NCBI RefSeq assembly: GCF_963921235.1
Contig: NC_086101.1
Span: forward strand, 12,400,001 to 12,464,000
Reading direction: 5' to 3'
Source: Mobula hypostoma
Taxonomy: Eukaryota
Length of the DNA: 64,000 nt
The notes beneath the pieces were generated by a model. That model saw nothing but the letters and a program-made list of their open reading frames with translations. It was not told the origin of the DNA and made no database searches. Made by a program: the position numbers and the translations under genes. Positions 656 to 64,000 of this stretch are shown here, piece after piece. The first letter of the stretch is position 1, and each line of letters opens with the position of its first letter.

Positions 656-1475
656 GAAACAAACATCGAGAGTGTGTGTGGTGTGGGGATAATGTTGCTG
701 TTCATATTTATGTAATGACAATTTACGATGGAAAGCATTTATGTAATTTGTTTATGGGATTAAAAAATTACCCGATGACTTTTTAGTGACTTTCTATTGA
801 GGTTGACAGCGCTGAACTCTGCCTCACATCTGACCCCGAGCCTTTTTCTTTCTTTAGTCGTGGATTGGCCACCATACAGCATGACATTGTAAGATTGAAT
901 GGCAATCTTAGATACCTGGCGACAGTGCAGAAAATAATTAATGAAGGTAAAATCAGCATGTACATTTATGAATGGTGTAAAAGGCAGCAGAGATTAATTG
1001 GCCAGAGCATTAATTTTATTTTATATCAATTTCATGCCTGTGGTGTCGGCAAGCTTTAGAGTTTAGTTTGGCTCAATGGTGAGATGTGGTCCTGGAGGAT
1101 ACAGAAGGCTTGTGGAGGTTGTGGATAATGTCCATATTAGTTATTTATGGCATCCGTTAGTCTTGTGAGACCATGGATCTGCGCCTGGAAAGTTTTCGCT
1201 CAGGCCTGGACAAGGTTGTATGGAAGACCAGCAGTTGCCCATGCTGCAAGTCTCTCCTCTCCATGGCACCGATGTTGTCTCGGTGGCAACATCGATGCCT
1301 CAGCTGGGACTCGAATTCACGACCTTCAGATCGCTAGTCGAATGCCTTAACCACTTGGCCACTATATTAGTGATATTGCCCTAATATGTTGACCCGCTGC
1401 TGGAGGTTCGCTTGGGCCAGAGGTGTAAGGTGCTAGGATCAGCTCCGGATCAGAATCGGGTTTATCACAGACGGA

Positions 1476-2003
1476 CACTCAGTGGCCACTTTACTAGGTA
1501 CAGCTGGGTGTCTGCTGGTTAATTGAATCCACTAAACAGCCAATCCTTTGTGTCTGCAGGTTATGCAAACAACTGAACAGCCAATCCTGTGTTTCTGCTG
1601 GTTAATGCAAACAACTAAACAGCCAATAATGTGGCAGCAGCTCAGTGCATAATAGCATGCAGACATGGTCAAGTTGTTGTTCAGACCAAACAATGGATTG
1701 AGGAAGAAATGTGATTTTTACTGTGGAATGACTGTTGGTGCCAGGCAGGGTGGTTTGAGTATCTCAAAAACTACTGATCTCTGGGACTTTTGTTCGCAAC
1801 GTTCTCTAAAGTTTACAGAGAATGGTGTTTAAAACAAAAACCCTGCAGTGAGCGAAAATGCCTTGTTATTGAGAGTGGTCAGACTGGTTCTGGACGACAG
1901 GAAGGTGACAGTAACTCAAGTAACCACATGGTACAACAGTGGTGTTTACAAGAGTGTCTGAATGAACAGTATGGAGAACATTCAAATGGACCTGCTAGAG
2001 CAC
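1476..2003. mobile_element. Tc1/mariner-like non-autonomous element, right end missing
   Basis: Starts CACTCAGTGGCCACTTTACTAGGTACA, the TIR of the complete copy at 36089-36572. Paralogous copies at ~13543-13885 and ~61320-61934. Confidence 0.65.
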
Positions 2004-2477
2004 AGACGCACTCTAAGACAGCACTTTACTACAGTAAGAATATATATAAATATATGCATATTAAACAGTTAAATTAAGATACGTAGTGTAACCGCACAAA
2101 TTTTAAAAAAAGCAGTGAGGTAGTGTTCATAGCTTGTTGATCAGGACTGTGGGAATGGTGGTGTTAAATATTGATGGTGACAACGAACAGCATCCTCCTG
2201 TCCAGGCCTCAGGCCGTGTGAAGAGTGAGTTCATTTGAAGTGGAATGGCTTAATGAAACAATTGAAAAAGCTACACTGAAATCTCGTGAGTTTGGAACGT
2301 GCAGTTTCTGCTCATCTCCATCGGAAATTGAATTTTTGAATTGAATTGAATGATCTTTATTGTCATTATACATAGGTACAATGAAACTCTGTTTCTCAGG
2401 CAATTAAATAAAGCGGTAGATAAAAACAAGACAGTAATAGAAAAACAGTATTAAATGGATAAGTAACAGAAAATAAA

Positions 2478-3267
2478 TCTTCTCCCCTGAATCTTGAAGG
2501 GAATGTGCCCCAGTTCTAGTCTCACCTTCCAATAGAAACTAGTTTCCCATTTCTATCTTATCTATCCCTTTCAAAATTTTGTATGTTTCTATAAGATTCC
2601 CTCTCATTCTTCTGAATTCCAGAGAGTATAGTCCCAGGTGACTCAATCTCTCCTCGTAGGTTAACCCTTTCATCCATGGAATCAACCTGGTGAACTTCCT
2701 CTGCACTGCCTCCAAAGCCAGTATATCCTTCCTCAAGTATGGAGACCAGAACCGCACACAGTACCCTGTATAGTTGCAGTATCACCTCCCTGCTCTTGAA
2801 TTCAATCCCTCTAGCAATTAAGGCCAACATTCTGTTTGCCTTCTTCCTAACCTATTGTACCTGCAAGCCAACCTTTTGCAAGTCATGTACAAGTGCTCCC
2901 AAGTCCCTCTGCACAACAGCATGTTGCAATCTTTCACCATTTAAATAATAATCTGCTCTTCTATTATTCCTTCCAAAGTGGATGATCCCTCATTTACCAA
3001 AGTTGTATTCTATCTGCTAGGACTTAGCCCACTCACTTAACCTATCTATATCCCTCTGCAGACGCTCCATATCCTCTGTACAATTTGCTTTTCCACTCAG
3101 TTTAGTGTCATCAGCAGATTTTGCTACACTACACTCAGTCCCCTCTTCCAAATCATCAATGTAAATGGTAAACAGTTGCAGGCCCAGCACTGACCCCTGC
3201 AGCACCCCACTCACCACTGACGCCAACCGGAGATCCCATTTATGCCAACTCTCTGCCTTCTATCTGT
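2478..3267 (-). mobile_element. CR1 LINE ORF2 (RT C-terminal) fragment
   Basis: Peptides PQGSVLG-like, KSADDTKL, FWSPYLRKDI and LGLYSLEFRRMRG in broken frames. Paralogous to 14797-16008. Confidence 0.9.
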
Positions 3268-3269
3268 TA

Positions 3270-5769: not shown

Positions 5770-6220
5770 GCAAAAGGGATTTAATTTTATTTGGCATAAC
5801 GTTGTGTACAGGCATTTTGGGCCGAAAACCCTGCTGGTCTGTTCAGTCTCTCCTCATAAGTGAAAAGCTAACAGCCCTGCAACTTCCTGGCTAATCTCCC
5901 CTTCACCCTTTTCAGCGCAATCCCGGTCTGCGGGGCCGGGGACGGGGTCGCCTGTTCATTCACCCTGTGGGCCTCAGGCAGCTCCCTGCATTTCCTCAAG
6001 GAAAACACTGACACCGTGCGGTCGGGTTCGGCAACGACCAGTCGCTGCAAAACCAATCGTGGCGCACATTTCCTTTTTTGGAAAAGATGCAGATTTAGGT
6101 CTTGGAATTGTCAGCACTAAACTACAGCAGTTAATCAAATAATCTAGATTTAGGGCATTTGTGGTAACGGTATTCTAGGAGGATCGTTCCTAAAAGTAGG
6201 AAATATATCTTCAAAATATT
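5770..6220 (+). promoter_or_regulatory. Orphan U1 upstream region (CCAAT, octamer-like ATGCAGAT, SPH-like TTGGAATTGTCAG) whose U1 gene is deleted
   Basis: Colinear with 27020-27445, which precedes a U1 copy. Homology to 16750-17044 stops right at the predicted PSE. Confidence 0.65.
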
Positions 6221-6346
6221 TGGGTGGCCATAAGTCTGGATATGTACAGACCACAACGGAAACGTATGTAAAGGATGGAAAGTTATTGAATGGTTTATTG
6301 TATATATAATTTATTTTTGTATAAAGTATATTTTAAAATAAAAAAA
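6221..6346 (+). mobile_element. Tx1-clade retrotransposon 3' end (subfamily a) at a deletion junction
   Basis: Matches the 3' UTR/A-tail at 11640-11750 and 27650-27774 (GGGTGGC.ATAA...GTTATTGAATGGTTTATTGTATATA...AATAAAAAAA). Confidence 0.75.
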
Positions 6347-7265
6347 ATTCTGCGTGTTCTATTGTAGAGCAGAGGCAGTTCACTATTTAAGGGAGACAGT
6401 TTTGAATACCACAGGCGCCAATCAAGACGGCGTTAATACAGAAATATCTCACTGTGGTAAAATAGTTTAACTTGGTCCTCAGGGCAGGAGATAAAGTCCA
6501 TGAGCAGGATACTTGTTGCCAGTGGATTTGATGAGTTTCTGCTTACAGTCTGCTGTTGGTCCACTGTTCATTTTCCCAACATAGATACTGCCTGACTTTC
6601 AAGGAGGAGGTACAGGAGCCAGGAGACACACCCAACTTTTCAAGAAAAACTTCTTCCCCTCTGCCATCAGAATCCTAGCCTCAAGCCCACTAACTCACAA
6701 TATTTTGCCGCCATTCTGCAATAACTATTTAATTTATTTTATATGTATTTCTTATCGTATTTTATATATAGTTTTAGAAATTACAATGTATTGCAATGTT
6801 CTGCTGCCACAAAACAACAAAGTTCAAACATATATCAATGGTATCAAATAGTGTATGTGTGTGTTGTGTGTGTCCAGTATTGGCGGTATCACTCCAGTGC
6901 ATTGAAGACCTGCTGCAGGTAGTCCTTGGCTGATAAAGTTCTTTTACGTCCGGACATGATACGATGTTGGTGATGCACAGAAACGCCAACAGTTGTGCGG
7001 AGAGCAGCTGGGAAAAGGCCCTTCCACCCAACTTGTCCAAGCCCCACAACAGCATCCTCCCGGCTAGTTCCAGTTGCCCGCAATCTGTCAATCACCTCCC
7101 CTCCAGGTACCTGTCCAAACACACACCTCAAAACTGAGCCTGCTGCCAATACTAATCGTCCCCAGTAAATGGGATTCTCTCCCAAGGCAGCTAATTAAGC
7201 CGTTTTTGGTGACAGTGCCGGATCTCCTGGCAAAAGCCTTTGGTAAAGTAATGCCAAAGTGCACC

Positions 7266-8397
7266 AAGAGTCATGGTTTTTGACTTCTCCAATGCGTTCA
7301 ACACAATCCACCCTGCTCTGCTGGGGGAGAAGCTGACAGCGATGCAGGTGGATGCTTTCCTGGTGTCATGGATTCTTGATTACCTGACTGGCAGACCACA
7401 GTACATGTGCTTGCAACACTGTGTGTCCGACAGAGTGATCAGCAGCACTGGGGCTCCACAGGGGACTGTCTTGTCTCCCTTTCTCTTCACCATTTACACC
7501 TCGGACTTCAACTACTGCACAGAGTCTTGACATCTTCAGAAGTTTTCTGATGACTCTGTCATAGTTGGATGCATCAGCAAGGGAGATGAGGCTGAGTACA
7601 GGGCCACGGTAGGAAAGTTTGTCACATGGTGTGAGCAGAATTATCTGCAGCTTAATGTGAAAAAGACTAAGGAGCTGGTGGTGGACCTGAGGAGAGCTAA
7701 GGTACCGGTGACCCCTGTTTCCATCCAGGGGGTCAGTGTGGACATGGTGGAGGATTACAAATACCTGGGGATACGAATTGACCATAAACTGGACTGGTCA
7801 AAGAACACTGAGGCTGTCTACAAGAAGGGTCAGAGCCGTCTCTATTTCCTGAGGAGACTGAGGTCCTTTAACATCTGTCAGACGATGCTGAGGATGTTCT
7901 ACGAGTCTGTGGTGGCCAGTGCTATCATGTTTACTGTTGTGTGCTGGGGCATCAGGCCGAGCGTAGCAGACACCAACAGAATCAACAAACTGATTCGTAA
8001 GGCCAGTGATGTTGTGGGGATGGAACTGGACACTCTGACGGTGGTGTCTGAGAAGAGGATGCTGTCCAAGTTGCATGCCATCTTGGACAACGTCTCCCAT
8101 CCACTACATAATGTACTGGTTGGGCACAGGAGTACATTCAGCCAAAGACTCATTCCACTGAGATGCAACACAGAATGTCATAGGAAGTCATTCCTGCCTG
8201 TGGCCATCAAGCTTTAGAACTCCTCCCTTGGAGTTTCAGACACCCTGAGCCAATAGGCTAGTTCTGGACTTATTTCCTGGCATAATTTACATATTACTAT
8301 TTAACTATTTATGGTTTTATTACTATTTAATTATTTATGGTGCAACTGTAACAAAAACCAATTTCCCCCAGGATCAATAAAGTATGACTATGACTAT
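7266..8397 (+). mobile_element. Rex1/Babar-type non-LTR retrotransposon, 5'-truncated
   Basis: RT peptides DFSNAFNTI, GAPQGTVLSPFLFTIYT and KFSDD, plus C-terminal LYFLRRLRSF. Tail is (TATGAC)n. The empty site CAAACTGCACCTGTGAG is visible at 19701 and 32196. Confidence 0.85.
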
Positions 8398-8913
8398 CAC
8401 CTGTGAGAGTGGGGAAGTGTTGACAAAAGAGATCCAGAAAGAAGGTGTGCTGGAAATTAGAAGGAAGATATCCCTGGGAAAGGGAGGAAGAGGAGGGAAC
8501 ATTAATTGAGATACAGTGATACTTTAACACCTATAAATTGTTGACTTCATGTTTTTGAAAACAAAATGGCAAGTTTTCCTTCCCTGGTGATGAAATATAA
8601 TTACACCCAATTTTTTTAAAAAATAAAAGATTTATTAAAAGCATGTTACAAGATACTTAAAACTGTAAAAAGATTACATTCCAAAACAGACGACTTAAAA
8701 AAAATAAAGTAACCCAATACAGAAAACCCGATCAAAGGAATTGAATAGACCTAGTTACCAATGTTTACAAACACAGCCAGATTCAGGACATTGACATAAC
8801 CCTGTGGTGTTACAGTGAAGACTATTCCCAAGTGCCAACATTAGCATCAGACCCACTGAAGTGTCCAGAGAGCTCAAACCGTGCAAGCCCCAGACAGTCA
8901 CATTTACAGTCCT

Positions 8914-10836
8914 TTAATCCACCTCCTCAATAGTTGGTCCGGCAGAACTGGCATTCCCAGCCTGTGCCCTGCACGATTCCCCTGCGGCTGCTCCTTGGTA
9001 CAGTTTGGCAATGATGGGATTGCAGAGTTTTTCCAGCTCTTTCTGCTTGTGCTCAAACTCCTCCTTCTCTGCCATCTGATTCTTCTCCAGCCAGGATATT
9101 GTCTCGTTGCACAGGTCAATGACTTTCCTCTTGTCCTCAGCACTGATCTTTCCGGCCATCTTCTCATCCTCCACAGAGCCCTTCATGTTGAAGGCATAGG
9201 ACTCCAGGGAGTTCTTGGCTGCAATCTTCTGCCGCTGCATTTCATCCTCATTCTTGTACTTCTCTGCATCTTGCACCATCCTGTCAATTTCCTCCTTACT
9301 CAGCCTGCCCTTGTCGTTGGTGATGGTGATCTTGTTTGTTTTCCCGGTGCTCTTGTCAACAGCAGAGACGTTGAGAATGCCATTGGCGTCAATATCGAAG
9401 GTCACCTCAATCTGGGGTACGCCACGAGGAGCGGGAGGGATGCCACTCAACTCAAACTTGCCCAGAAGGTTGTTGTCCTTGGTCATGGCTCTCTCACCTT
9501 CAAACACCTGAATAAGGACCCCAGGCTGGTTATCAGAGTAGGTGCTGAAGATTTGGGTCTGCTTGGTGGGGATTGTTGTGTTACGCTTGATAAGGGTGGT
9601 CATGACTCCACCTGCCGTCTCCAGCCCCAGTGACAGAGCAGCAACATCCAGGAGTAGCAGATCCTGAACATTCTCCGACTTGTCGCCCATCAGAATGGCC
9701 GCCTGGACAGCTGCCCCATAGGCCACGGCCTCATCGGGGTTGATGCTCTTGTTCAGCTCCCTACCGTTGAAGAAATCTTGCAGCAGCTTCTGGATCTTGG
9801 GGATTCGGGTGGAGCCTCCGACCAGGACAATTTCATGGATCTGGGATTTGTCCAGCTTGGCATCTCTCAGGGCTTTCTCCACTGGCTCCAGAGTGCCCCT
9901 GAACAGGTCAGAGTTCAGCTCCTCAAAGCGAGCCCTGGTGAGTGAGGTGTAGAAATCAACTCCCTCAAACAGAGAGTCAATCTCAATACTGGCTTGGGTG
10001 CTGGAAGACAGCGTTCTCTTTGCTCTCTCACAGGCCGTCCGCAGCCTCCTCACCGCTCTCTTGTTCTGGCTGATGTCTTTCTTGTATTTCCGCTTGAACT
10101 CCTCAATGAAGTGATTGACCATGCGGTTGTCAAAGTCCTCTCCTCCCAGGTGGGTATCTCCAGCTGTTGATTTCACTTCAAAGATACCGTCATCGATGGA
10201 GAGAATGGACACATCGAAAGTGCCACCACCCAGGTCAAAGATGAGAACATTACGCTCCCCTTTGCCTTTCTTGTCCAGACCATAGGCAATGGCAGCTGCT
10301 GTTGGCTCATTGATGACACGCAGGACATTGAGACCAGCTATCACACCAGCATCTTTGGTTGCCTGGCGTTGGGAGTCATTGAAGTAAGCAGGAACGGTGA
10401 TGACAGCGTTGGTGACTCTGCAGCCAAGGTAAGCCTCAGCAATTTCCTTCATCTTGGTCAGCACCATGGAGGAGATTTCCTCTGGGTAAAAGGTTTTGTT
10501 CTCCCCCTTGTACTCCACCTTCACCTTTGGCTTCCCCGCATCACTCACCACCTGGAAGGGCCAGTGCTTCATGTCAGAATGCACCGTCGGGTCATCAAAC
10601 CTTCTCCCGATGAGCCGCTTGGCATCAAAGATGGTGTTGGCGGGGTTCATTGCCACCTGGTTCTTTGCTGCATCACCGATGAGCCTCTCGGTGTCGTTGA
10701 AGGCCACATAGCTGGGGGTGGTGCGATTGCCCTGGTCATTGGCGATGATCTCCACCTTGCCATGTTGGAAGACCCCTACACAGGAGTAGGTGGTGCCCAG
10801 GTCGATACCGATGGCTGTCCCCTTTGATGCAGACAT
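8914..10836 (-). CDS. hsp70: Heat shock 70 kDa protein, inducible cytosolic type, intronless (copy A, 640 aa)
   Basis: Single ORF with [32 protein letters not shown] and a C-terminal GPTIEEVD. HSEs upstream; AATAAA at 8631-8636 (-). Confidence 0.98.
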
Positions 10837-10939: not shown

Positions 10940-11112
10940 TTAATATTGTCCCAGCACAGGGTGTGGGCGGTGCTTTGTTCTTGAGGGACGACCAGGTAAA
11001 CCAATGAAAACGCCGGCGAGTGACTCACCGCCGAAGGTTGGAGAAGGTTCCGAGGCGGCGGCCAATCACAGCGCTGCTAGTCTGAGACTTGCCAGGGCTT
11101 CGCGAATATTCT
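10940..11112 (-). promoter_or_regulatory. HSP70-A promoter: TATA-like box, GC box, two CCAAT boxes, AP-1 site, two heat shock elements
   Basis: Perfect 3-unit HSE cTTCg cGAAt aTTCt at 11098-11112; aGAAg gTTCc at 11042-11051; CCAAT at ~11001 and ~11062; TGACTCA at ~11021; AATATTAA (-) at 10940-10947. Confidence 0.88.
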
Positions 11113-16735: not shown

Positions 16736-17045
16736 GACCAGAAGAGATTTAATTTTATTTGGCATAAGGTTGTGTACAGGCAGTTTGGACCGAAAGATCC
16801 GTTCGTGTGCTGTCCTGTGTTCACTCTCCCCTCATAAGTGAAAAGCTAACAGCCCTGCAACATCCTGGCTAATCTCCCCTTCACCCTTTTCAGCGCAATC
16901 CCGGTCTGCGGGGCCGGGGACGGGGTCACCTGTTCATTCACCCAGTACAGCAGCTAATTAAATAATCTAGATTTGCGGCATTTGTGGTAACGGTATTCTA
17001 GGAGGAGCACGTGGAATAGTAGGAAATAGATCTTTAAAACATTTG

Positions 17046-17066
17046 TTCGCCTGATTATTGAGGGGT
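17046..17066 (+). promoter_or_regulatory. Putative snRNA proximal sequence element (PSE)
   Basis: TTCGCCTGATTATTGAGGGG at about -60 from the U1 start; conserved at the same spacing before the second U1 copy (~27445). Confidence 0.55.
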
Positions 17067-17106
17067 GTGGGTTAAGCATGCATGCGGATGGCAGAGAAGA
17101 AAAAGC

Positions 17107-17270
17107 ATACTTACCTGGCAGGGGAGAAACCGTGATCATTAAGGCGGTTCTCCCAGGACGAGGCTATCCCATTGCACTTCGGGTGTGCTGACGCCTGCGA
17201 TGTCCCCAAATGCGGGATACTCGACTGCAAAATTTGTGGTAGTGGGGGACTGCGTTCGCGCTCTCCCCTG
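17107..17270 (+). ncRNA. RNU1: U1 spliceosomal snRNA, full length (164 nt)
   Basis: 5' ATACTTACCTGG; loop II ATTGCAC; Sm site AATTTGTGG; terminal stem GGGGGACTGCGTTCGCGCTCTCCCCTG. Same length as canonical U1; 3'-box-like TCTAAAAACAGG follows. Confidence 0.97.
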
Positions 17271-17679
17271 ATTTCTAATCTAAAAACAGGCTGGTCTGTT
17301 GTTGAAACGTATTATGTACAGCAAAGAATAATCGCATGAATTGACGATCGCTGGTTCACTTCGCACATCTCGGTGCTTCCAGATATCTCATCATTCACCC
17401 ACTCGCTTATAAGGTTACAATTTTACAAGTGCCTTCCGTTCTCTCAACCAAACAAACAAATTGCGCCTCAACTTGTTATTTAAGAGCTAGATCAGGAACA
17501 ACAGAATAAGGTGTGAAAAAAACAATAGGTGCCGGAAACAGCCGCTCACATCAATTCTGTAGAAAAGGACGAACACGAGAAATTCTACAGATACTGAGCT
17601 GCAAGTACAAAATAAAATACAAAAAATGTTGGGGGGCCGGCTGAGCGGTCTCGGCGGCTGCTTACCTTTTCGCATCGTT

Positions 17680-17880
17680 TTTTCCCCCCAAACAAAATAT
17701 ACTTGATAAAATTATTTATGACAAATCATTCAATAACTGTGAATTCATGACCATTTCATTCTATAGTTTAAAAATGGTAGTCACTCACGTGGCACTCTGC
17801 TAGTTCATCCGGTATAATACAACCGTAGTTGAGGGGTATACACCCCGCTACCCAACCCATCCCACTCGCGCGGGAGAAGA
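17680..17880 (-). mobile_element. Old degenerate Tx1 3' UTR in the U1 downstream flank (paralogs ~29795-29990 and ~55995-56190)
   Basis: Reverse complement contains GAGTGGGATGGGTTGGGTAGCGGGGTGTATACCCCTCAAC...GTGCCACGTG...GTTATTGAATG, matching the 3' UTR at 11550-11750. Confidence 0.6.
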
Positions 17881-18235
17881 ACCCTAAAGAAACATTCATC
17901 CGATTTTTTTTTAAACTTTCAGACGCAAGGCGATATTTCCTCCCTTGATATCCAGATCCAGGAATCATAGTCTCAGGATAAAAACTTGTTCGTTCGGGAC
18001 AGAGTTGAAAACTCGAGATCAAGGGTCTGTCTAATCCGAAACGTCGACTGTCCATTTCCCTCTGCAGATGATGACTTCAGCCAACACTTAAGATATGTTG
18101 GTGCCGATTACAACATCTTTTGTCCCTTGGAGTATATTTTCTACCCCGTATTCAATTCTCCATATTCTATTGTAGAGGGCAGAGAAAGTTCAGCATTTAA
18201 GGGAGACAGTTTTAAATACCAGAGGCGCCAATGAA

Positions 18236-18973
18236 TACGACTTGCCGAGGATAGCGGAACCAGGACATGGAACTTGGAACTAGGAGCCTGGGCTTGGACT
18301 CCGAGCCAGAGACTGGACAACGACCCAGAACCTGGGCTTGCCTCGGGCTCGGACCCTGGAACAAGGCAAGGACATGACGTGGCTACAGGACTGGACGAGG
18401 CTAGAGGCTGGAGGCAGGGGTCTTGGGTCTGGAGAACAGGCGAAGACATGGCGAGGCTGGGGTTCCTGGAGAACAGGCGGAGGCTGGGATCGACGAGGCT
18501 TGGGATCTTCGGGGCTAGACGAGGCTTGGGATCTTCGGGGCTAGACGAGGCTTGGGAACTTCGGGGTAAGTACTGGGCAGGACGGAGGACTCCTCCCCAC
18601 GGAGGCAAGGACAGGGAGGGACAGACCCAACAACAGGGTAACAGCATTACCCGACGGAAGCAAGGGACAGAAAGCGAGTAAGGTCCGGGGTGGCTCCAAG
18701 ACTCGAGGCGGCCGGTAACTTCGGCGGTCTACAAAACAGCCAAATCCATATCTCGATGACTGCACTAGCCTTCCACCGGTGGGTTGCTCCAAGGGAAGAC
18801 TGACAAGACAACCCAACCACCACACTCGACCCCAGGACCACTTATATTCCCAGCCCCAAGATGAGCATCAGGTGTTTATGGTTAAGTCCGACCGAAACAA
18901 GGGAGAGCCGGAAGACCCGGAGATCAGAATCGGACCGTGAACCGGAAAGCGGAGTTCGGACCGGCCCATGACA
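18236..18973 (-). mobile_element. LTR-like element with internal ~26-bp repeats
   Basis: Ends ...CCCATGACA (TGTCATGG on minus). Related to 1-655. GAGGCTTGGGATCTTCGGGGCTAGAC repeats at ~18495-18568. Confidence 0.5.
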
Positions 18974-19304
18974 TTTCTTTCGTCAGAGTGTGTTGAAACT
19001 GTGGATTCCTTACCACAAATGGCTGGCGAAGACCTCAAGTTATTGGAGACACTTAAAGATGAGGTTGATAGTTTCTTGATTAGTGAGCGTATCAAAGGTT
19101 ATTGATGGAGAGAAAGCAGGGGAATGGATTTAAGAAGGAAAATTATTTAGCGATTATTGCATGCCAAAGCAGTATCGATGGGCTGAATGGACTCATTCTG
19201 TTCCTCTGTCTAAAGGTGATTTAAATCAGAAGTTCAATAAGCACCCGCTTAGAGTGTACAGAAATCTCTGCAAGATTTTACGTGATTACAAGGTAAAATA
19301 CCTT

Positions 19305-20015
19305 GTAACTGATAAAGTTCCTTTACATCCTGATACTGTATGATACGCTGTTGGTGATGCACAGAAACGCCAACAGTTGTGCGGAGAGCAGCTGGGAAAT
19401 GGCCCTTCCACCCAACTTGTCCAAGCCCCACAACAGCATCCTCCCGGCTAGTCCCAGTTGCCCGCAACCTGTCAATCACTTCCCCTCCATGTACCTGTAC
19501 AAACACACACCTCAAAACTCAGCCTGCTGCCAATACCAAACGTCGTTCCCAGCATATGGGATTCTCTCCCAAGGCAGTGAATTAAGCTGTTTTTGGTGAC
19601 AATGCAGGAGCTACTGGCGAAGGGCAACATCACTAGATCTGTCAACTTTGGGGACTGGTCACCTTCTTGAAGAACCAAAAGCCTTCTGGTAAAGTAATGC
19701 CAAACTGCACCTGTGAGGGTGGGGAAGTGTTGACAAAAGAGATCCAGAAAGAAGGTGTGCTGGAAATTAGAAGGAAGATATCCCTGGGAAAGGGAGGATG
19801 AGGAGGGAACATTCATTGATATACAGCAATACTTTAACACCCATAAATTGTTGATTTCATGTTTTTGAAAACAAAATGGCAAGTTTTCCTTCTCTGGTGA
19901 TGAAATATAATTACACCCAATTTTTAAAAAATTAAAAGATTTATTAAAAGCATATTACAAGATACTTAAAACTGTACAAAGTTTACATTCCAAAACAGAT
20001 GACATTAAAAAAAGT
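19305..20015 (-). pseudogene. Orphan HSP70 3' end (distal 3' UTR with AATAAA plus downstream flank); CDS and promoter deleted
   Basis: Colinear with 8400-8705 and 31800-32510, including the polyA signal at 19940-19945. Homology stops at ~20015. Confidence 0.8.
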
Positions 20016-20469
20016 AAAATAATGTAGTGGGAAGTGTATTGAGGTAAGTGCACGCATTATGGCCAGTTAAGGGACCACCAGTGCTTTTGAACAGAATATC
20101 AGAATCAGAATCAGGTTTATTAACAGAGGTGCTGTTGAATTTGTTAATTTAGCAGCAGCAGTTCAATGCAATACATAACATAAAAAGTAAATACATAAGT
20201 AGATCAATTACAGTAAGTCTATATATGTGAATTTAATAGAGTAAAACTAGTGCAAAACAGAAATATAAATTATATATATATATGGTAGTGTTCACGGGTT
20301 CAATGACCATTCAGAAATCAGATTGTAGTGGGGAAGAAGCTGTTCCTGAATTGCTGAGTGTGTATCTTTACATAGAAACATAGAAACATAGAAAATAGGT
20401 GCAGGAGTAGGCCATTCGGCCCTTCGAGCCTGCACCGCCATTTATTATGATCATGGCTGATCATCCAAC

Positions 20470-23400: not shown

Positions 23401-23500
23401 TCACTTTACACCCCTCTGTCTCTCTGCACTGGTTCCCACCCCTCTGTTGTGAACTAACCTCCTCACGCCTAGCCTCTTTAATTTGATTCCCACCCCCCAA
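20470..23500 (-). pseudogene. CR1 ORF2 (APE endonuclease + reverse transcriptase), two frameshifts
   Basis: NARSI, ITETWL, VYRPP, GDFN, SPGPDG, YRPVSLTS, KFVDDTKL. Frames break at ~21660 and ~20757. Confidence 0.9.
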
Positions 23501-23505
23501 CCATT

Positions 23506-27012: not shown

Positions 27013-27269
27013 TGCACAGGCATTTTGAGCCGAAAGATCAGCTCCTGTGCGCACTCTCCCTGTGTTTAATCTCCCCTCATAAGTGAAAAGCTGACCCCCC
27101 CAGCAATTTCCTGGCTAATCTCCCCTTCACCCTTTCCAGCGCAATCCCGGTCTGCGGGGCCGGGGACGGGGTCACCTGCTCATTCACCCTGTGGGCCTCA
27201 GGGAGCTCCCTGCATTTCCTCAAGGAAAACACTGACACCGTGCGGTCGGGTTCGGCAACGACCAGTCGC

Positions 27270-27500: not shown

Positions 27501-27511
27501 GATATTTATCT

Positions 27512-27936: not shown

Positions 27937-27940
27937 AGGG

Positions 27941-45800: not shown

Positions 45801-48310
45801 CAATTCTAGGTTAATTTCTGCCCAGTAGCCTTAGCAACCCTCCCTGCCAGGATATTGGTCCCCCTGGGATTCAAGTGCAACCCGTCCTTTTTGTACAGGT
45901 CACACCTGCCCCAAAAGAGGTCCCAATGATCCAGAAATCTGAATCCTTGCCCCCTGCTCCAATCTCTCAAACATGCATTTATCCTCCACCTCATTCTATT
46001 CCTATACTCACTGTCACATGGCACAGGCAGTAATCCCGAGATTACTACCTTTGCGGTCCTGCTTCTTAACTTCCTTCCTAACTCCCCAAAGTCTTTTTTC
46101 AGGATCTCTTACCTTTTCCTACCTATGTCATTGGTACCAATATATGCCACGACCTCTTGCTGTTCTCCTTCCCACTGCAGGATATTTTGGATGCAATCTG
46201 AAACACCTCCGACCCTGGCACCTGGGTGGCAAACTGTCATCTGTGTTTCTTTCCTGCGTCCACAGAATTGACTGTCTAATATACCTACGCTATTTCCTCC
46301 AGTTCCAAACACACTTTTCCACTGTCACACTTGATTGGTCCTATTCTCTCATGTCTATCCTCTCGCTCTTCACATACTTGTTGAATGCCTTGGGGTTTTC
46401 CTTAATACTGTCCGCCAATGCCTTCTCATGGCCCCTTCTGGCTCTCCTAATCTTATTCTTAAACTCCTTCCTGCTAACCTTATAATCTTCTAGATCTCTA
46501 TCATTACCTAGTCTTTTGAACCTTTCATAAGCTCTTTTCTTCTTGACTGGATTTACAACAGCCTTTGTACACCACGGATCTTGTATCCTACCATCCTTTG
46601 CATGTCTCATTGGAACGTACCTACTCAGAAACCCATGCAAATATCCCCTGAACATTTGCACATTTCTTCCGTTTCCCTGAGAACATCTGTTTCCAATTTC
46701 CTGCCTGATAGCCTCATATTTCCCCTTACTCCAATTAAACATTTCCCTGACTTGTCTTTCCTATCCGTCTCCAATGCTATGGTAAAGGAGATAGAATTGT
46801 GATTGCTATCTCCAAAATGCTCTCCCACTGAGAGACCTGACACCTGACCAGGTTCATTTCCCAATACCAGATGAAGTACAGTCTCTCCTCCTGTACTCTT
46901 GGAGGCTTATCTACATATTGTGTCAAGAAACCTTTCTGAACACACCTAACAAACTCCACCCCATCTAAACCCCTCACTCTAGGGAGATGCCAATCAATAT
47001 TTAGGAAATTAAAATCTCCCACCAGAACAACCCTGTTATTATTACTCCTTTCCAGAATCTGTCTCCCTATCTGCTCCTTGATGTCTCTGTTACTATTGGA
47101 TGGTTATAAAGAACACCTAGTTGAGTTATTGACCCCTTCCTGTTCCTAACTTCCACCCACAGAGACTCCGTAGACAATCGCACCATGACTTCCTCCTTTT
47201 CTGCAGCCGTGACACTATCTCTGATCAACAGTGCCAGGCCCCCACCTCTTTTGCCTCCCTCCCTGTCCTTTCTGAAACATCTAAAGCCTGGCACTTGAAG
47301 TAGCCATTCCTGCCCTTGCACCATCCAAGTCTCTGTAATGGCCACAACATCATAGCTCCAAGTGCTGATCCACACTCTAAGCTCGTCCTCTTTATTCATG
47401 ATACTCCTCGCATTAAAACAGACACATCTCAAGCCATTGGTTTGAGCACATCCGTTCTCTATCACCTGCCTATCCTCCCTTTCACACTGTCTCCAAGCTT
47501 TCTCTATTTGTAAGCCAACCTCCCTTTCCTCCATCACTTCAGTTCAGTACCAATATGTACCATGACCTCTGGCTGTTCTCCTTCCCACTTCAAGATATCA
47601 TGGATGCGATCAGAAACATCCCGGACCCTGGCACTTGGGAGGCAAACTACATCTGAGTTTCTTTCCTGCGTCCAAAGAATCGCCTATCTGACCCCCTAAC
47701 TATAGAGTCCCCTATTACTACTGCCGTCCTCTTCCTTTCCCTACACTTCTGAGCCACAGGGCCAGACTCTGTGCCAGAGGCACGATCACTGTTGCTTCCC
47801 CCAGGTAGGCCGTCCACCCCAACAGTACTCAAGCAGGAATACTTATTGTTAATGGGGACAGCCACTGGGGTACTCTCTAGTACCTGCTTCTTGCCCTTCC
47901 CTCTCCTGACTGTTACCCACTTCTTTGTCTCCTGTGGTCCCGAGGTGACTACCTGCCCATAGGCTCCTCTCTATCACCTCCTCATTCTCTGTGACCAGAT
48001 GAAGGTCATCTAGCTGCAGCTCGACGCACCTACTTTAGATGTGGTTGTCCGGGAGGCCAGGAGTCTCCAGGGCCTCCCACATCTGACACCGAGCACAGAA
48101 AACCGGCCTCACACACATACTCTCCATCTTTATTCTAAACAGATAACCTACCTTGTCTCGACCCTTTATCGTTGAAGCCCCGTTGAGCCAAAGCCTTCCT
48201 ACTCTGTCTCCCTCTACTCTGACGCACGCTCTGTAAATCTGCCTTCCTTTTAAACTCTTCCCACCGTTCTCACTGGCTGACCTCCACACGATTGCGCAGT
48301 CGAGCCCCAT
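42828..48310 (-). mobile_element. Rearranged full-length CR1 with a duplicated ORF1/endonuclease segment
   Basis: ORF2 at 42828-45800; ORF1 pieces at 45806-46280 and 47545-48120; a second APE segment at 46285-47540 (NARSI, ITETW, GDFNF). Confidence 0.88.
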
Positions 48311-50780: not shown

Positions 50781-52703
50781 ATGTCTGCATCAACGGGGAC
50801 AGCCATCGGTATCGACCTGGGCACCACCTACTCCTGTGTGGGGGTCTTCCAACATGGCAAAGTGGAGATAATCGCCAATGACCAGGGCAATCGCACCACC
50901 CCCAGCTATGTGGCCTTCAACGACACCGAGAGGCTCATCGGTGATGCAGCCAAGAACCAAGTGGCAATGAACCCCGCCAACACCATCTTTGATGCCAAGC
51001 GGCTCATCGGGAGAAGGTTTGATGACCCGACGGTGCAGTCTGACATGAAGCACTGGCCCTTCCAGGTGGTGAGTGATGCGGGAAAGCCAAAAGTGAAGGT
51101 GGAGTACAAGGGGGAGAACAAAACCTTTTACCCAGAGGAAATCTCCTCCATGGTGCTGACCAAGATGAAGGAAATTGCTGAGGCTTACCTTGGCTGCAGA
51201 GTCACCAATGCTGTCATCACCGTTCCTGCTTACTTCAATGACTCCCAACGCCAGGCAACCAAAGATGCTGGTGTGATAGCTGGTCTCAATGTCCTGCGTG
51301 TCATCAACGAGCCAACAGCAGCTGCCATTGCTTATGGTCTGGACAAGAAAGGTAAAGGGGAGCGTAATGTTCTCATCTTTGACCTGGGTGGTGGCACCTT
51401 CGATGTGTCCATTCTCTCCATCGATGATGGTATCTTTGAAGTGAAATCAACAGCTGGAGATACCCACCTGGGAGGAGAGGACTTTGACAACCGCATGGTC
51501 AATCACTTCATTGAGGAGTTCAAGCGGAAATACAAGAAAGACATCAGCCAGAACAAGAGAGCGGTGAGGAGGCTGCGGACGGCCTGTGAGAGAGCAAAGA
51601 GAACGCTGTCTTCCAGCACCCAAGCCAGTATTGAGATTGACTCTCTGTTTGAGGGAGTTGATTTCTACACCTCAATCACAAGGGCTCGCTTTGAGGAGCT
51701 GAACTCTGACCTGTTCAGGGGCACTCTGGAGCCAGTGGAGAAAGCCCTGAGAGATGCCAAGCTGGACAAATCTCAGATCCATGAAGTTGTCCCGGTTGGA
51801 GGCTCCACCAGAATCCCGAAGATCCAGAAGCTGCTGCAAGATTTCTTCAACGGTAGGGAGCTGAACAAGAGCATCAACCCCGATGAGGCCGTGGCCTATG
51901 GGGCAGCTGTCCAGGCAGCCATTCTGATGGGCGACAAGTCGGAGAATGTTCAGGATCTGCTACTCCTGGATGTTGCTGCTCTGTCACTGGGGCTGGAGAC
52001 GGCAGGTGGAGTCATGACCACCCTTATCAAGCGTAACACAACCATCCCCACCAAGCAGACCCAAATCTTCAGCACCTACTCTGATAACCAGCCTGGGGTC
52101 CTTATTCAGGTGTTTGAAGGTGAGAGAGCCATGACCAAGGACAACAATCTTCTGGGCAAGTTTGAGTTGAGTGGCATCCCTCCCGCTCCTCGTGGCGTAC
52201 CCCAGATTGAGGTGACCTTCGATATTGACGCCAATGGCATTCTCAATGTCTCTGCTGTTGACAAGAGCACCGGGAAAACAAACAAGATCACCATCACCAA
52301 CGACAAGGGCAGGCTGAGTAAGGAGGAAATTGACAGGATGGTGCAAGATGCAGAGAAGTACAAGAATGAGGATGAAATGCAGCGGCAGAAGATTGCAGCC
52401 AAGAACTCTCTGGAGTCCTATGCCTTCAACATGAAGGGCTCTGTGGAGGATGAGAAGATGGCCGGAAAGATCAGTGCTGAGGACAAGTGGAAAGTCATTG
52501 ACCTGTGCAACGAGACAATATCCTGGCTGGAGAAGAATCAGATGGCAGAGAAGGAGGAGTTTGAGCACAAGCAGAAAGAGCTGGAAAAACTCTGCAATCC
52601 CATCATTGCCAAACTGTACCAAGGAGCAGCCACAGGGGAATCGTGCAGGGCACAGGCTGGGAATGCCAGTTCTGCTGGACCAACTATTGAGGAGGTGGAT
52701 TAA
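50781..52703 (+). CDS. hsp70: Heat shock 70 kDa protein, inducible, intronless (copy C, 640 aa)
   Basis: Full ORF ending EEVD; AATAAA at 52987-52992. Carries L338P in signature 3. Confidence 0.96.
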
Positions 52704-56624: not shown

Positions 56625-56749
56625 CAGGGGAAAGCGCGAACGCAGTCCCCCACTACCACAAATTTTGCAGTCGAGTATCCCGCATTTGGGGACATCGCAG
56701 GCGTCAGCACACCCGAAGCGCAAAGGGATAGCCTCGTCCTGGGAGAACC
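56625..56749 (-). pseudogene. U1 snRNA 3' part (exactly nt 40-164)
   Basis: Minus strand reads poly(A)-GGTTCTCCCAGGACGAGGCTATCCCTTTGCGCTTCGG...AATTTGTGG...TTTCCCCTG; 125 nt. Confidence 0.93.
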
Positions 56750-58103
56750 TTTTTTTTCAAAGATACTTTATTCAGAAGTGTTACAAAATAAAGTTAATTA
56801 CATAAAGAAAAAAAACATTCGTTGACTCTGAGTCCTTATTCAATAAAGTTACTAACAATAAAAATTATGCGTTGACTCTCTGTTCATTTACAAATGAAAG
56901 ATGTTTACAATAAACCATGCATTTACTCTCAACCCTTGGTCAAGGGTTAAGACTTATTAACAATCAAATTATCAACAATAAAGGCAGGCAATGGCTCTAA
57001 TACTTTCCCAAATTAACAATTCCACCCACTCCTTGGGCACCATGTTGATTATCTGTCCACACCGCTGAAGAGGGTTAGTCTCCTCCCCACCCAACCCCTC
57101 CCACTCCCACGGGTGATGAACGTTAAACTGTGCTCCTTCCCCACCGGGCCTTCGCGGTGGCCACACCAAGCTGGAGTGCATCCCTCAGCACGGACTCTTG
57201 CAGACGAGAGTGTGCCAGTCGGCAGCATTCAATCACGGACATCTCCATCTGCTGGCAGACCATCAAGTTTCGGCCGACCAAAGACCAAGTTTCACCGATT
57301 TGATGATCTGCCAGCAGCACCGAATGTTTGTCTCCGTGTGCGTCCCCGGGAACAGCCCGTAGATCACGGAGCCCTCGGTAACGCAGCTGCTGGGCATGAA
57401 TCCTAGTACTGTCCCTTCCATTCTCTTCCACACCTTCTTCGCGAACCCACAGTGTGCAAAGAGGTGAGCCCCCGACTCCACCCCATTACAGTCCTCCCGT
57501 GGGCAGTGGGGTGTGGAGGAACCGTTCCGGGCGTACAGGAGGGATCTGACTGGGAGGGCCCCTCTCACCGCCAGCCAGGCTAGGTCTTTGTGCCTATTGG
57601 TGAGATCTGGCGATGAGGCATTTTGCCAGATGAACTGGATGGTCTGCTCAGGGAATCACCCCACTGTGTCCATTACGTCCTTCTCCTGCAGTGCCTGCAG
57701 GACATTACGTGCCGACCACTGTCTAATGGCCCTGTAGTCAAATTCGTTGGCCTTGAAGAATTTTTCCATGAAGGACAGGTAAGGAGGCAACGACCAGCTG
57801 ACAGGGGTGTTGCGCGGGAAAGGGGCCAGACCCATCCTTCGTAGCCAGGGCGACAGGTAAAACCTGGGCACATAGTAGTACTTTGTGCCCACGTATCTGG
57901 GATCCACGCACAACCTGATGCAGCCACACACGAAGCTGGTCATCAGGGTGAGGGCGACATTGGGGACGTTCTTGCTCCCGTTGTCCAGGTACCTGTGCAT
58001 GGCGGTCCGCTCACCCGCTCCATCTTGGATCCCCAGACGAATCTGAAGACAGCTCGTGTGATTTTCGAGCTGTCGGAGCGGGGGACGGGCCACACCTGCT
58101 TCG
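56750..58103 (-). mobile_element. Tx1-clade retrotransposon 3' portion (ORF2 C-terminus with CCHC, 3' UTR, poly(A); subfamily b) inserted in U1
   Basis: FRFVWGSKMERV, NGSKNVPNVAL, GALPVRS, CPREDC...ESGAHLFAHC, ECCRLAHSRLQE. The 3' UTR matches 28898-29237. Confidence 0.88.
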
Positions 58104-61695: not shown

Positions 61696-61903
61696 GATTA
61701 GCTGTTTAGTTGTTTGCATTAACCAGCAGACACACAGGATTGGCTGTTTAGTGGTTTACATTAACCAGCAGACACACAGGATTGGCTGTTCAGTTGTTTG
61801 CATTAACCAGCAGACACACAGGATTGGCTGTTCAGTTGTTTGCATTAACCAGCAGACACACAGGATTGGCTGTTTAGTGGTTTACATTAACCAGCAGACA
61901 CAC
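61696..61903. repeat. 40-bp tandem repeat (~5 copies) inside a Tc1-like MITE (61320-61934)
   Basis: GATTGGCTGTT(T/C)AGT(T/G)GTTT(G/A)CATTAACCAGCAGACACACAG units. Confidence 0.9.
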
Positions 61904-62707
61904 AGCTGCACCTAGTAAAGTGGCCACTGAGTGTCCGTCTGTGACAAACCCGATTCTGATCCGGAGCTGATCCTAGCACCTTACACCTCTGGCCCAAGGG
62001 AACCTCCAGCAGCGGGTCAACATATTAGGGCAATATCACTAATATAGACATCATCCACAACCTCCACAAGTCTTCTGTATCCTCCAGGACGACATCTCAG
62101 CATTGAGCCAAATTAAACACTAAAGCTTTCCGATACCACAGCCATGAAATTGTTATAAAATAAAATTAATGCTCTGGATAATTAATCTCAGCTGGCTTTT
62201 ACACCATTTTTTAAAATGTTCATGCTGATTTCACCTTAATTAATTACTGTCGCCAAATATCTAAGATCGCCACTCAATTGTACAATGTCATGCTGTATTC
62301 TGGCCAATCCATGGCTAAAGAAAGAAAAAGGCTCCCGGTCAGAGGTGAGGTGGAGTTCAGCGCTGTCAACCTCGATAGAAAGTCATCGGGTAACTGCAGA
62401 AGTTCTTTTGTCAAAATTGAATGTCACAAACTCTGACTTTCAGTTCTCTACTTCCTTTAAGTGCTCCGTTACTAATTTCGCCCTGCTGATATGACCCAGA
62501 GCTGTCGTTCCTTGTTTGCTGGTTTCGTCCCTTAAAGCCAGAGAATTCTCTCCCCAGAAGGTGCTTCAGATTTTTTCTTGTGTGTAGGGAACTTTTGGAA
62601 GAAATTGCTGGTTTCGTATAGTTTAACAAGTGTTTCAAAGGGTTCCCGAATGACTTGGTTTTCAGCCAGAACCTCCCTGACTGCTCCAGATCATCCTCGC
62701 TATTACC

Positions 62708-62881
62708 AGAATATTCGCGAAGCCCCGGCAAGTCTCGGACTAGCAGCGCTGTCATTGGCCGCCGCCTCGGAACCTTCTCCAACCTTCGGCGGTGAGTCAC
62801 TCGCTGGCGTTTTCATTGGTTTACAGGGTCGTCCCTCAAGAACAAAGCACCGCCCAGACCGCTGCGCTGGGACTACATTAA
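62708..62881 (+). promoter_or_regulatory. HSP70-D promoter (HSEs intact, TATA altered)
   Basis: aGAAt aTTCg cGAAg at 62708-62722; TACATTAA at 62874-62881 versus TATATTAA in B and C. Confidence 0.85.
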
Positions 62882-62983
62882 GGGGCGGAGCAGCGGACCA
62901 GGCAGTAACGATCTGCTTGGAGAAGCAAGGAATTCCTTCTGGTATTTCAATAAAAAACGTTGGAGCTTTCGTCAGATACACAG

Positions 62984-64000
62984 ATGTCTGCATCAACGGG
63001 GACAGCCATCGGTATCGACCTGGGCACCACCTACTCCTGTGTTGGTGTCTTCCAGCATGGCAAGGTGGAGATCATCGCCAATGACCAGGGCAACCGCACC
63101 ACCCCCAGCTATGTGGCCTTCAACGACACCGAGAGGCTCATCGGTGATGCAGCCAAGAACCAGGTGGCAATGAACTCCACCAATACCATCTTTAATGCCA
63201 AGCGGCTTATTGGGAGGAGGTCTGATGACCCGACGGTGCAGTCCGACATGAAGCACTGGCCCTTCCAGGTGGTGAGTGATGTGGGGAAGCCAAAGGTGAA
63301 GGTGGAGTACAAGGGGGAGAACAAGACCTTTTACCCAGAGGAAATCTCCTCCAAGGTGCTGACCAAGATGAAGAAATTTGCTGAGGCTTACCTTGGCTAC
63401 AATGTCACCAACGCTGTCATCACCGTTCCTGCTTACTTCAATGACTCCCAATGCCAGGCAACCAAAGATGCTGGTGTGATAGCTGGTCTCAATGTCCTGC
63501 GTGTCATCAATGAGCCAACAGCAGCTGCCATTGCCTATGGTCTGGACAAGAAAGGCAAAGGGGAGCGTAATGTTCTCATCTTTGACCTGGGTGGTGGCAC
63601 CTTCGATGTGTCCATTCTCTCCATCGATGACGGTATCTTTGAAGTGAAATCAACAGCTGGAGATACCCACCTGGGAGGACAGGACTTTGACAACCACATG
63701 GTCAATCACTTCATTGAGGAGTTCAAGCGGAAATACAAGAAAGACATCAGCCAGAACAAGAGAGCGGTGAGGAGGCTGCGGACGGCCTGTGAAAGAGCAA
63801 AGAGAACGCTGTCTTCCGGCACCCAAGCCAGTATTGAGACTGACTCTCTGTTTGAGGGAGTTGATTTCTACACCTCAATCACCAGGGCTCGCTTTGAGGA
63901 GCTGAACTCTGACCTGTTCAGGGGCACTCTGGAGCCAGTGGAGAAAGCCCTGAGAGATGCCAAGCTGGACAAACCCCAGATCCATGAAATTGTCCTGGTC
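62984..64000 (+). CDS. hsp70: HSP70 copy D, 5' part (339 codons, runs off window); open frame with many radical substitutions, possible pseudogene
   Basis: ATG at 62984, [18 protein letters not shown]...EIVLV with no stop or frameshift. Missing from the ORF track, probably because no stop lies in the window. Confidence 0.9.

What the first reader, a model, noticed from the sequence alone, without database searches (positions are those of the whole stretch)
656..64000. A co-amplified HSP70 + U1 snRNA cassette repeated in tandem and inverted
Seen: the same ordered blocks recur as U1 promoter > U1 > flank < HSP70 < HSE promoter, Tc1 MITE, CR1, hAT remnant. Tandem units sit around U1 positions ~6220 (U1 lost), 17107 (HSP70 lost) and 27941 (U1 split, HSP70-B), with a period of about 11.5 kb (660 vs 12165). 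Inverted units lie on the right (HSP70-C with U1 at 56625, then HSP70-D). U1 3' ends and HSP70 polyA sites converge about 2.7-3.6 kb apart. Established: heat shock inhibits splicing and inducible HSP70 genes are typically intronless. Inference: the snRNA gene and the stress gene form one unit of duplication. This could be passive linkage, or a stress-linked arrangement such as a heat-responsive U1 variant or HSP70 read-through running antisense into U1/Tx1.
Basis: partly seen in the sequence, partly recalled or inferred. Interest (0 to 1): 0.8.

Follow-up and report, generated by a model that had tools for sequence, protein, structure and literature searches.

The report
HSP70 genes interleaved with U1 array edge
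In a manta/devil-ray-like genome, a block holding a heat-shock HSP70 gene and a U1 spliceosomal RNA gene has been copied about eight times where the HSP70 cluster meets the main U1 gene array, but no copy keeps both genes working, so this looks like passive hitch-hiking rather than a stress-linked device.

Summary
The window has three intact, 99%-identical, intronless HSP70 genes with heat-shock-element promoters. A fourth runs off the right end. It also has one intact U1 (17107-17270) and two broken U1 copies. These lie in the same convergent order, U1 then shared flank then HSP70, in tandem on the left and inverted on the right.

The context changes the reading. The window lies on the left flank of the genome's main tandem U1 array (C12:12.378-12.589 Mb, at least 15 full-length copies). 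That array is itself nested in an HSP70 cluster (12.31-12.64 Mb). About eight composite HSP70+U1 units exist in the 264 kb read, so the two genes were duplicated as one segment.

Nothing supports a functional pairing:
- No composite unit keeps both genes intact.
- The window's only intact U1 has lost its distal enhancer.
- Perfect HSE trimers occur only at HSP70 promoters.
- No U1 lies within 10 kb of 17 HSP70 genes in two skates, a sawfish, a shark and a sturgeon.

Best reading: a boundary-spanning segment was amplified by unequal crossing-over plus one inversion, and the copies then decayed (confidence about 0.8). The nearest relatives could not be fetched. The scan had already noted the U1-targeting LINE on other DNA of this genome.

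The parts
5803..6222 (+). U1 promoter remnant of unit A. The U1 gene and about 670 bp downstream of it are deleted.
   Evidence: 87-88% match to the array U1 promoter module. No U1 hit here. The next homology resumes at array-unit position 670.
6930..8913 (-). HSP70-A 3' flank and 3'UTR. Poly(A) signal at 8631-8636 (complement).
8914..10836 (-). HSP70-A: intact intronless 640-aa gene.
   Evidence: PF00012, 877 bits, full length. ORF. dN/dS 0.03-0.14 against the other intact copies.
11099..11111 (-). Trimeric heat-shock element of the HSP70-A promoter, about -275 from the ATG.
16740..17106 (+). Upstream region of the intact U1. The proximal 161 bp are 97-99% identical to array copies. About 153 bp present in array copies are missing at 16943/16946. 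That segment holds the octamer-like element and a second motif conserved among U1 paralogues.
17107..17270 (+). Intact U1 snRNA coding sequence. It differs from the array copies by one base (A22 instead of G22).
   Evidence: RF00003, 158.6 bits, model positions 1-166. SNP. A 3'-box-like AAAAACAG lies 13 nt downstream.
17455..18239 (+). U1-downstream flank module of the 17107 unit.
   Evidence: 80% to unit B and C copies; 88% to the array-unit copy.
19050..20022 (-). HSP70 3' flank and last ~80 nt of the 3'UTR, with a poly(A) signal at 19940. The coding sequence is gone.
   Evidence: 92-95% to the same module of units A, B, C, D and E.
20371..24465 (-). CR1-like LINE (esterase ORF1, endonuclease, reverse transcriptase) lying where the HSP70 gene of this unit would be.
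   Evidence: Pfam PF13472, PF03372, PF00078.
25133..27489 (+). Unit B: U1 array-unit upstream sequence and U1 promoter (26994-27489).
   Evidence: Colinear with the U1-only array unit at 86-92%.
27499..29355 (+). Unit B: dead U1. The U1 5' end is interrupted by a ~425-bp retroposon with a 13-bp target duplication (27499 and 27938). U1 nt 1-65 lies at 27941-28005, a LINE fragment at 28006-29230, and U1 nt 40-164 at 29231-29355.
   Evidence: The ORF at 28032-28742 has a ZCCHC3-type RNA-binding domain.
29356..32722 (.). Unit B spacer: U1-downstream module (29579-30086), an AT-rich insert, then the HSP70 3' flank and 3'UTR (31553-32722, poly(A) signal at 32434).
32723..34645 (-). HSP70-B: intact. 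HSE trimers at 34907 and 35502.
40000..48100 (-). LINE-rich centre between the two arms. Decayed, internally duplicated LINE copies with strong negative GC skew.
50781..52703 (+). HSP70-C: intact, the inverted twin of B. HSE trimer at 50507, poly(A) signal at 52987.
56625..57110 (-). Unit C: U1 nt 40-164 (56625-56749) abutting the same LINE tail as in B.
62709..64000 (+). HSP70-D promoter (HSE at 62709) and coding sequence from 62984, cut by the window end. The full copy has a stop at codon 437, just outside the window, and raised dN.

Best explanation
The window is the degenerate left flank of the genome's main tandem U1 snRNA array, at the point where that array meets the heat-inducible HSP70 gene cluster.

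A segment spanning the boundary held one U1 array unit and, convergent to it, one HSP70 gene with its HSE promoter. This segment was duplicated repeatedly by unequal crossing-over or segmental duplication and was inverted once. The result is about eight composite units.

The pairing is passive physical linkage. After each duplication the redundant copies decayed independently. U1 was lost through a deletion, through LINE or retroposon insertions at nt 39/40, or through loss of its enhancer. HSP70 was lost through deletion, a frameshift plus an insertion, or a stop codon.

The intact HSP70 coding sequences stay alike through purifying selection and probably gene conversion. The core U1 array to the right is homogenised by concerted evolution.

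Shown: the architecture, the copy states, and the absence of the linkage in other species. Inferred: the duplication mechanism and the lack of function.
For: Location:
- The window is C12:12.400-12.464 Mb. Fifteen of the 22 best U1 hits in the 3.48-Gb genome lie at C12:12.378-12.589 Mb.
- HSP70 copies span 12.31-12.64 Mb on both sides of them.

Composite units:
- They share two flank modules in one order and orientation.
- B and C are sister in both modules, at 98.2% and 99.7%.
- A and A' share the same U1 deletion.

State of the units:
- A', A, B and C have HSP70 intact and U1 dead.
- The units at -22239, 17107 and 96736 have U1 intact and HSP70 dead.
- D has both genes broken.

U1 side:
- U1-only units to the right are 7.3-7.7 kb and 98.3-99.6% identical. 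U1 flanks inside the window are only 86-90% like them, as expected for relic copies at an array edge.
- The intact U1 in the window lacks about 153 bp. That segment carries the octamer-like element and a second motif conserved across U1 paralogues.

HSP70 side:
- HSE trimers occur only at HSP70 promoters.
- dN/dS is 0.03-0.14 for intact copies.

Other species:
- No U1 lies within 10 kb of 17 HSP70 genes in Leucoraja, Rhinoraja, Pristis, Heptranchias and Acipenser.
- The sawfish locus is syntenic with the two left-most HSP70 copies, which are U1-free in the ray too.
Against: - The closest relatives (Mobula birostris, Hypanus, Hemitrygon) could not be read. The age and spread of the linkage within stingrays and devil rays are therefore unknown.
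- No heat-shock RNA data were available.
- RNA-like runs hold 26-45% of the sampled words of an HSP70-to-U1 intergenic stretch. Some transcription there is possible, and its origin is unresolved.
- The 344-bp core of the intact U1 is 97-99% identical to array copies, while its flanks are about 88-90%. That fits gene conversion, but it also fits selection on a still-used gene.
- With only six independent unit lineages, the absence of a doubly intact unit is not statistically significant (roughly p = 0.2-0.3 by my estimate).
Confidence: 0.8

Rival explanations
1. Stress-linked arrangement. The convergent HSP70-U1 pairing is functional. Either HSP70 read-through during heat shock runs antisense into U1 and damps it, or a U1 variant is heat-responsive. 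Selection would then keep the two genes together.
For: The convergent geometry recurs with 1.9-3.6 kb spacing. RNA-like runs hold part of an intergenic stretch that lies beyond the conserved poly(A) signal. It is established that heat shock inhibits splicing and causes read-through downstream of genes (my own knowledge, not tested here).
Against: - No unit has both partners intact.
- There is no HSE near any U1.
- The intact U1 in the window lacks its enhancer region and differs from array copies by one stem base that only turns a G-U pair into A-U.
- The linkage is absent in five other species.
- Ten or more U1 units of the array carry no HSP70 sequence.
- The words held in RNA may all come from the U1-downstream module, which is present in at least 13 array units.
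Confidence: 0.07
2. Antagonism. Convergent transcription of two very active Pol II genes a few kb apart is harmful, so selection favoured loss of one partner in every composite unit.
For: Survival of HSP70 and U1 is mutually exclusive in all eight composite units, which make up six independent lineages.
Against: The pattern is expected fairly often from independent decay of redundant copies (about 0.2-0.3 by my estimate). One unit lost both genes. The inactivating events are of ordinary kinds (TE insertion, deletion).
Confidence: 0.07
3. Assembly artefact. The repeated units are false duplications or a misjoined or collapsed repeat region.
For: The region is highly repetitive. The only DNA runs that hold most of its words come from one sample, probably the assembly's own. 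Read-level checking failed.
Against: Copies differ by 2-20% and carry different TE insertions, deletions and coding defects. False haplotype duplications would be nearly identical. There are no N gaps in the 264 kb read.
Confidence: 0.05

Closest known systems
Tandem U1/U2 snRNA gene arrays with large repeat units (human RNU1 at 1p36, RNU2 at 17q21; Xenopus embryonic U1 repeats). From my own knowledge.
   Same: Many near-identical snRNA genes lie head to tail with kilobases of co-repeated flank and are homogenised by concerted evolution. Divergent or dead copies sit at the margins. Here the units are 7.3-7.7 kb and 98-99.6% identical.
   Different: Here the flank of the array has captured and co-duplicated a protein-coding stress gene, and the array lies inside that gene's own cluster.
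Linked multigene-family repeats, such as 5S rDNA units carrying U1/U2/U5 snRNA genes in fishes and crustaceans. From my own knowledge; related fish work appears in PMC3464664 and PMC3123226, which were listed but not read.
   Same: An snRNA gene and an unrelated multicopy gene are repeated together as one unit.
   Different: In those cases both genes are normally intact in each unit and the unit is regular. Here the partner is HSP70, the units are irregular, and none keeps both genes.
Inducible HSP70 gene clusters (HSPA1A/HSPA1B-type duplicates).
   Same: Intronless genes with HSE promoters, in tandem and inverted copies. Coding regions are far more alike than flanks. Tandem clusters are also seen in skate, sawfish, shark and sturgeon.
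   Different: None of the other clusters examined has a U1 gene within 10 kb.
Target-specific Tx1/Keno-clade LINEs (Keno in U2 genes; PMC4494074).
   Same: Retroposon tails abut the snRNA at one fixed nucleotide. Four U1 copies are cut at nt 39/40 with two different tails.
   Different: The target here is U1, which is not among the Tx1 targets listed in that paper (U2, U5, 5S, satellites, transposons). This is a side issue to the cassette.

Membership tests
U1 spliceosomal snRNA gene (RF00003) | Full-length covariance-model match above the gathering score. | tested here: met
   17107-17270 scores 158.6 bits against a cut-off of 69.5, over model positions 1-166. The 29204 and 56625 hits pass the cut-off only because of nt 40-164.
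U1 spliceosomal snRNA gene (RF00003) | 5' splice-site recognition sequence (nt 3-10, ACUUACCU) and Sm site. | tested here: met
   Both are present in 17107-17270. The copies at 29231-29355 and 56625-56749 keep the Sm site but lack nt 1-39. The 5' piece at 27941 is mutated to ATATTTATCT.
U1 spliceosomal snRNA gene (RF00003) | Vertebrate snRNA promoter: a proximal element plus a distal enhancer with an octamer; a 3' box downstream. | tested here: not met
   The proximal 161 bp and a 3'-box-like AAAAACAG are kept. The ~153 bp carrying the octamer-like ATGCAGAT and a second conserved motif are missing from the window copy. Activity was not measured.
Heat-inducible HSP70 (HSPA1-type) | Full-length Hsp70 domain, uninterrupted intronless ORF, C-terminal EEVD. 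| tested here: met
   PF00012, 874-877 bits, profile positions 1-599. ORFs of 640 aa ending in PTIEEVD.
Heat-inducible HSP70 (HSPA1-type) | Heat-shock elements (nGAAnnTTCnnGAAn) in the promoter. | tested here: met
   A trimer lies at about -274 from the ATG in A', A, B, C, D and E, with extra dimers nearby. The window has 5 perfect trimers against 0.7 expected, all at HSP70 promoters.
Heat-inducible HSP70 (HSPA1-type) | Induction by heat. | not testable with these tools
   No heat-shock RNA data.
Functional composite repeat (two genes kept together in each unit) | The same ordered modules in three or more units. | tested here: met
   The U1 module, U1-downstream module, HSP70 3' flank and HSP70 recur in about eight units.
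Functional composite repeat (two genes kept together in each unit) | Both genes intact within units. | tested here: not met
   None of the eight units has both genes intact.
Functional composite repeat (two genes kept together in each unit) | Linkage conserved in related species. | tested here: not met
   No U1 within 10 kb of 17 HSP70 genes in five species. The nearest relatives were not obtainable.
Homogenised tandem snRNA array | Head-to-tail units of near-identical sequence. | tested here: met
   Outside the window, 7.66-kb neighbours are 99.6% identical. Inside the window the U1 flanks are only 86-90% like the array, so the window holds edge relics rather than core units.

The most novel reading that the evidence does not exclude
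In devil rays the principal U1 snRNA array was seeded inside the heat-inducible HSP70 cluster and grew with it. Two bursty, intronless Pol II gene families would then share one chromatin domain or nuclear-body neighbourhood. Stress-induced HSP70 read-through, or competition between convergent genes, would modulate nearby U1 copies, and this would explain why every composite unit kept only one partner.
Probability: 0.08. Interest if true: 0.6.

Novelty: new member of a known kind. Interest (0 to 1): 0.3.

Why it matters
The finding gives a fully resolved example of how a tandem snRNA array and a stress-gene cluster can intermingle by boundary-spanning duplications. It shows copies outside the homogenised core decaying in different ways. 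It locates this ray's main U1 locus and at least six intact inducible HSP70 genes, which is useful for annotation. A physical coupling of splicing and heat-shock genes would be notable if it were functional, but the evidence here points to hitch-hiking. The general biological weight is therefore modest.

Tried and rejected
There is therefore no read-level test of assembly, expression or read-through.
- The look-up of encoding contigs returned no DNA for Mobula birostris, Hypanus sabinus or Hemitrygon akajei because the files were too large. One Pristis protein was not on record.
C12:12.564-12.66 Mb is therefore known only from search hits.
- Literature searches for a U1-HSP70 linkage found nothing relevant.
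- A heat-responsive U1 was considered and rejected: there is no HSE near any U1.
- A distinct U1 variant was considered and rejected: there is a single A22/G22 difference.
- The idea that mutual exclusivity proves antagonism was rejected because only six independent lineages exist.
- Tandem Repeats Finder found nothing in 36-50.5 kb. The long-period repeats there are LINE duplications.
Full report
**What is in the window**

Rfam finds one full-length U1 at 17107-17270(+), scoring 158.6 bits. It also finds two matches just above the cut-off at 29204-29355(+) and 56625-56781(-). In the two weak matches only U1 nt 40-164 is real. Upstream of that lies a retroposon tail ending ...TGAATAAAGTA...AAAAAAAA.

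Three 640-aa ORFs are full-length Hsp70 proteins and 99% identical: 8914-10836(-), 32723-34645(-) and 50781-52703(+). A fourth starts at 62984(+) and runs off the window. Each has a trimeric heat-shock element about 274 nt before the ATG. Perfect trimers occur five times in the window against 0.7 expected, and only at HSP70 promoters. A conserved AATAAA lies 280-291 nt after each stop codon.

- A versus B is direct at 96.7%.
- B versus C is inverted at 94-98% over 6 kb.
- The 17107 unit shares both the U1-downstream flank and the HSP70 3' flank with B and C.

**Wider context**

The window is C12:12,400,001-12,464,000 of a 3.48-Gb assembly. Fifteen of the 22 best U1 hits in the genome lie at C12:12.378-12.589 Mb. 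To the right of the window they sit on the minus strand at 7.3-9.3 kb spacing. Intronless HSP70 copies span C12:12.31-12.64 Mb on both sides of that array.

I read 264 kb without gaps, C12:12.300-12.564 Mb. U1-only units are 7.66 kb. Neighbouring units are 99.6% identical, and a 7.3-kb unit from another part of the array is 98.3% identical. That is a homogenised tandem array.

The HSP70 protein is 99% identical to Mobula birostris and 98% to Hypanus and Hemitrygon. The genome is therefore a myliobatiform ray, probably a Mobula.

**Composite units**

Two modules define the composite unit. One is a U1-downstream module, which is also part of every U1-only unit. The other is an HSP70 3' flank module. 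In window coordinates the units are as follows:

| Unit | U1 | HSP70 |
|---|---|---|
| -22239 | intact | only a 3' fragment remains |
| A' (HSP70 at -5552) | deleted | intact |
| A (8914) | deleted | intact |
| 17107 | intact coding sequence | deleted beyond 20022 |
| B (32723) | dead | intact |
| C (50781) | cut at nt 40 | intact |
| D (62984) | cut at nt 40 (67067) | stop at codon 437, raised dN |
| E (96736) | intact | frameshifted, with a ~1.1-kb insertion (91835-94858) |

A further remnant lies near C12:12.605 Mb.

B and C are sister in both modules, at 98.2% and 99.7%. The other units differ by 5-8% in the HSP70 flank and 7-14% in the U1 flank. A and A' share the same ~0.9-kb deletion that removed U1.

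**Why passive linkage is the better reading**

1. None of the eight composite units, which form six independent lineages, keeps both genes intact.
2. The only intact U1 in the window matches array copies from -161 to +19 at 97-99%. It lacks about 153 bp found in array copies. That missing segment holds an octamer-like ATGCAGAT (ATGCAAAT in a second, dispersed U1 class on C12 21-32 Mb) and a second motif conserved between the two classes. From established knowledge of vertebrate snRNA promoters, loss of the distal element sharply lowers transcription. This was not measured here.
3. The window's U1 differs from the array copies by one base, A22 for G22. This turns a G-U pair of stem-loop I into A-U. 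It is not a distinct variant.
4. No HSE lies near any U1.
5. At least ten array units carry no HSP70-derived sequence.
6. Neither Rfam nor BLAST finds a U1 within 10 kb of 17 HSP70 genes in other species. These are Leucoraja erinacea (5 genes), Rhinoraja longicauda (2), Pristis pectinata (5), Heptranchias perlo (2) and Acipenser ruthenus (3). The sawfish locus is syntenic with the two left-most ray copies, which also lack U1. The composite unit therefore arose after the split from sawfishes.

U1 flanks inside the window are only 86-90% like the homogenised array, whereas unit E and the unit at 72302 are 97-98% like it. The window thus holds relic copies at the array's edge.

Intact HSP70 coding sequences show dN/dS of 0.03-0.14 and dS of 0.03-0.07. 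This holds even against the left-most copy, whose 3'UTR is unrelated. That pattern suggests gene conversion confined to the coding region, as is known for HSP70 duplicates.

**How the U1 copies died**

In B, a ~425-bp retroposon sits in the U1 5' end with a 13-bp target duplication (27499 and 27938). U1 nt 1-65 follows at 27941-28005, then a LINE fragment at 28006-29230, then U1 nt 40-164.

Four U1 copies (29231, 56625, 67067 and 74959) start at nt 40-42 directly after a poly(A) tail. Two different tail sequences are involved. This fits a LINE that prefers this U1 site. Other notes of this scan report the same thing elsewhere in this genome. The Tx1-clade targets listed in PMC4494074 do not include U1.

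**What remains open**

The nearest relatives could not be fetched.

Runs that look like RNA from the same species hold about the share of unit B's words expected from the HSP70 mRNA alone, 0.31-0.37. They also hold 26-45% of the words of an intergenic stretch of unit E that begins 375 nt past the stop codon. The 3' 54% of that stretch is the U1-downstream module, present at 98-99% identity in at least 13 array units. The signal could therefore be U1 read-through, HSP70 read-through or something else. It could not be localised.

DNA runs of a second species hold 18-28% of the words. This is compatible with homologous modules at about 95% identity, but it does not show that the modules are adjacent there.

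An assembly artefact is unlikely. The copies differ by 2-20% and carry different insertions and defects, and the 264 kb has no gaps.

**Verdict**

The co-duplication is real. The functional reading is unsupported. This is a new combination of a known kind of event: array-edge segmental duplication with a hitch-hiking gene.

Noticed in passing
window 29231, 56749; region C12:12,467,191 and 12,475,081: Four U1 copies are cut at the same nucleotide (nt 39/40, loop of stem-loop I) directly after a poly(A) tail. Two different retroposon tails are involved, which suggests a U1-preferring Tx1/Keno-type LINE. The same ~220-bp tail also occurs at non-U1 sites (11545-11751, 27552-27775).
   Followed up: partly
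L002, L015, L017, L018, L020-L022 (C12 21-32 Mb) versus L003-L014: The genome has two U1 sequence classes with compensatory differences in stem-loop I. The tandem-array class has a degenerate octamer (ATGCAGAT). The dispersed class has a perfect ATGCAAAT. This recalls the embryonic (tandem) versus somatic (dispersed) U1 genes of frogs.
   Followed up: partly
window 40000-48100: The centre between the two inverted arms is filled with decayed, internally duplicated LINE copies on the minus strand (endonuclease and RT fragments). These explain the strong negative GC skew (-0.36 to -0.43).
   Followed up: partly
L044:1233-2584 (C12:12,495,233-12,496,584): Small runs that look like RNA from the same species hold 26-45% of the sampled words of this HSP70-to-U1 intergenic stretch. 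This may reflect transcripts from the U1-downstream module shared by the array.
   Followed up: partly
window 16946-17289: The 344-bp core of the intact U1 (promoter-proximal 161 bp, gene and 3' box) is 97-99% identical to array copies, while its flanks are about 88-90%. This suggests a short gene-conversion tract or selection on the core.
   Followed up: no
L052, L057, L058: A TRIM-like gene (RING, B-box, PRY/SPRY) flanks the HSP70 cluster in little skate, sawfish and sevengill shark, so the cluster's neighbourhood is old.
   Followed up: no
C12:12,604,940-12,605,990 (outside the DNA read): A further remnant holds both the U1-downstream and HSP70 3' flank modules, on the far side of the U1 array and in the orientation of the left arm. 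It lies about 6 kb from an 85%-identical HSP70 copy.
   Followed up: no
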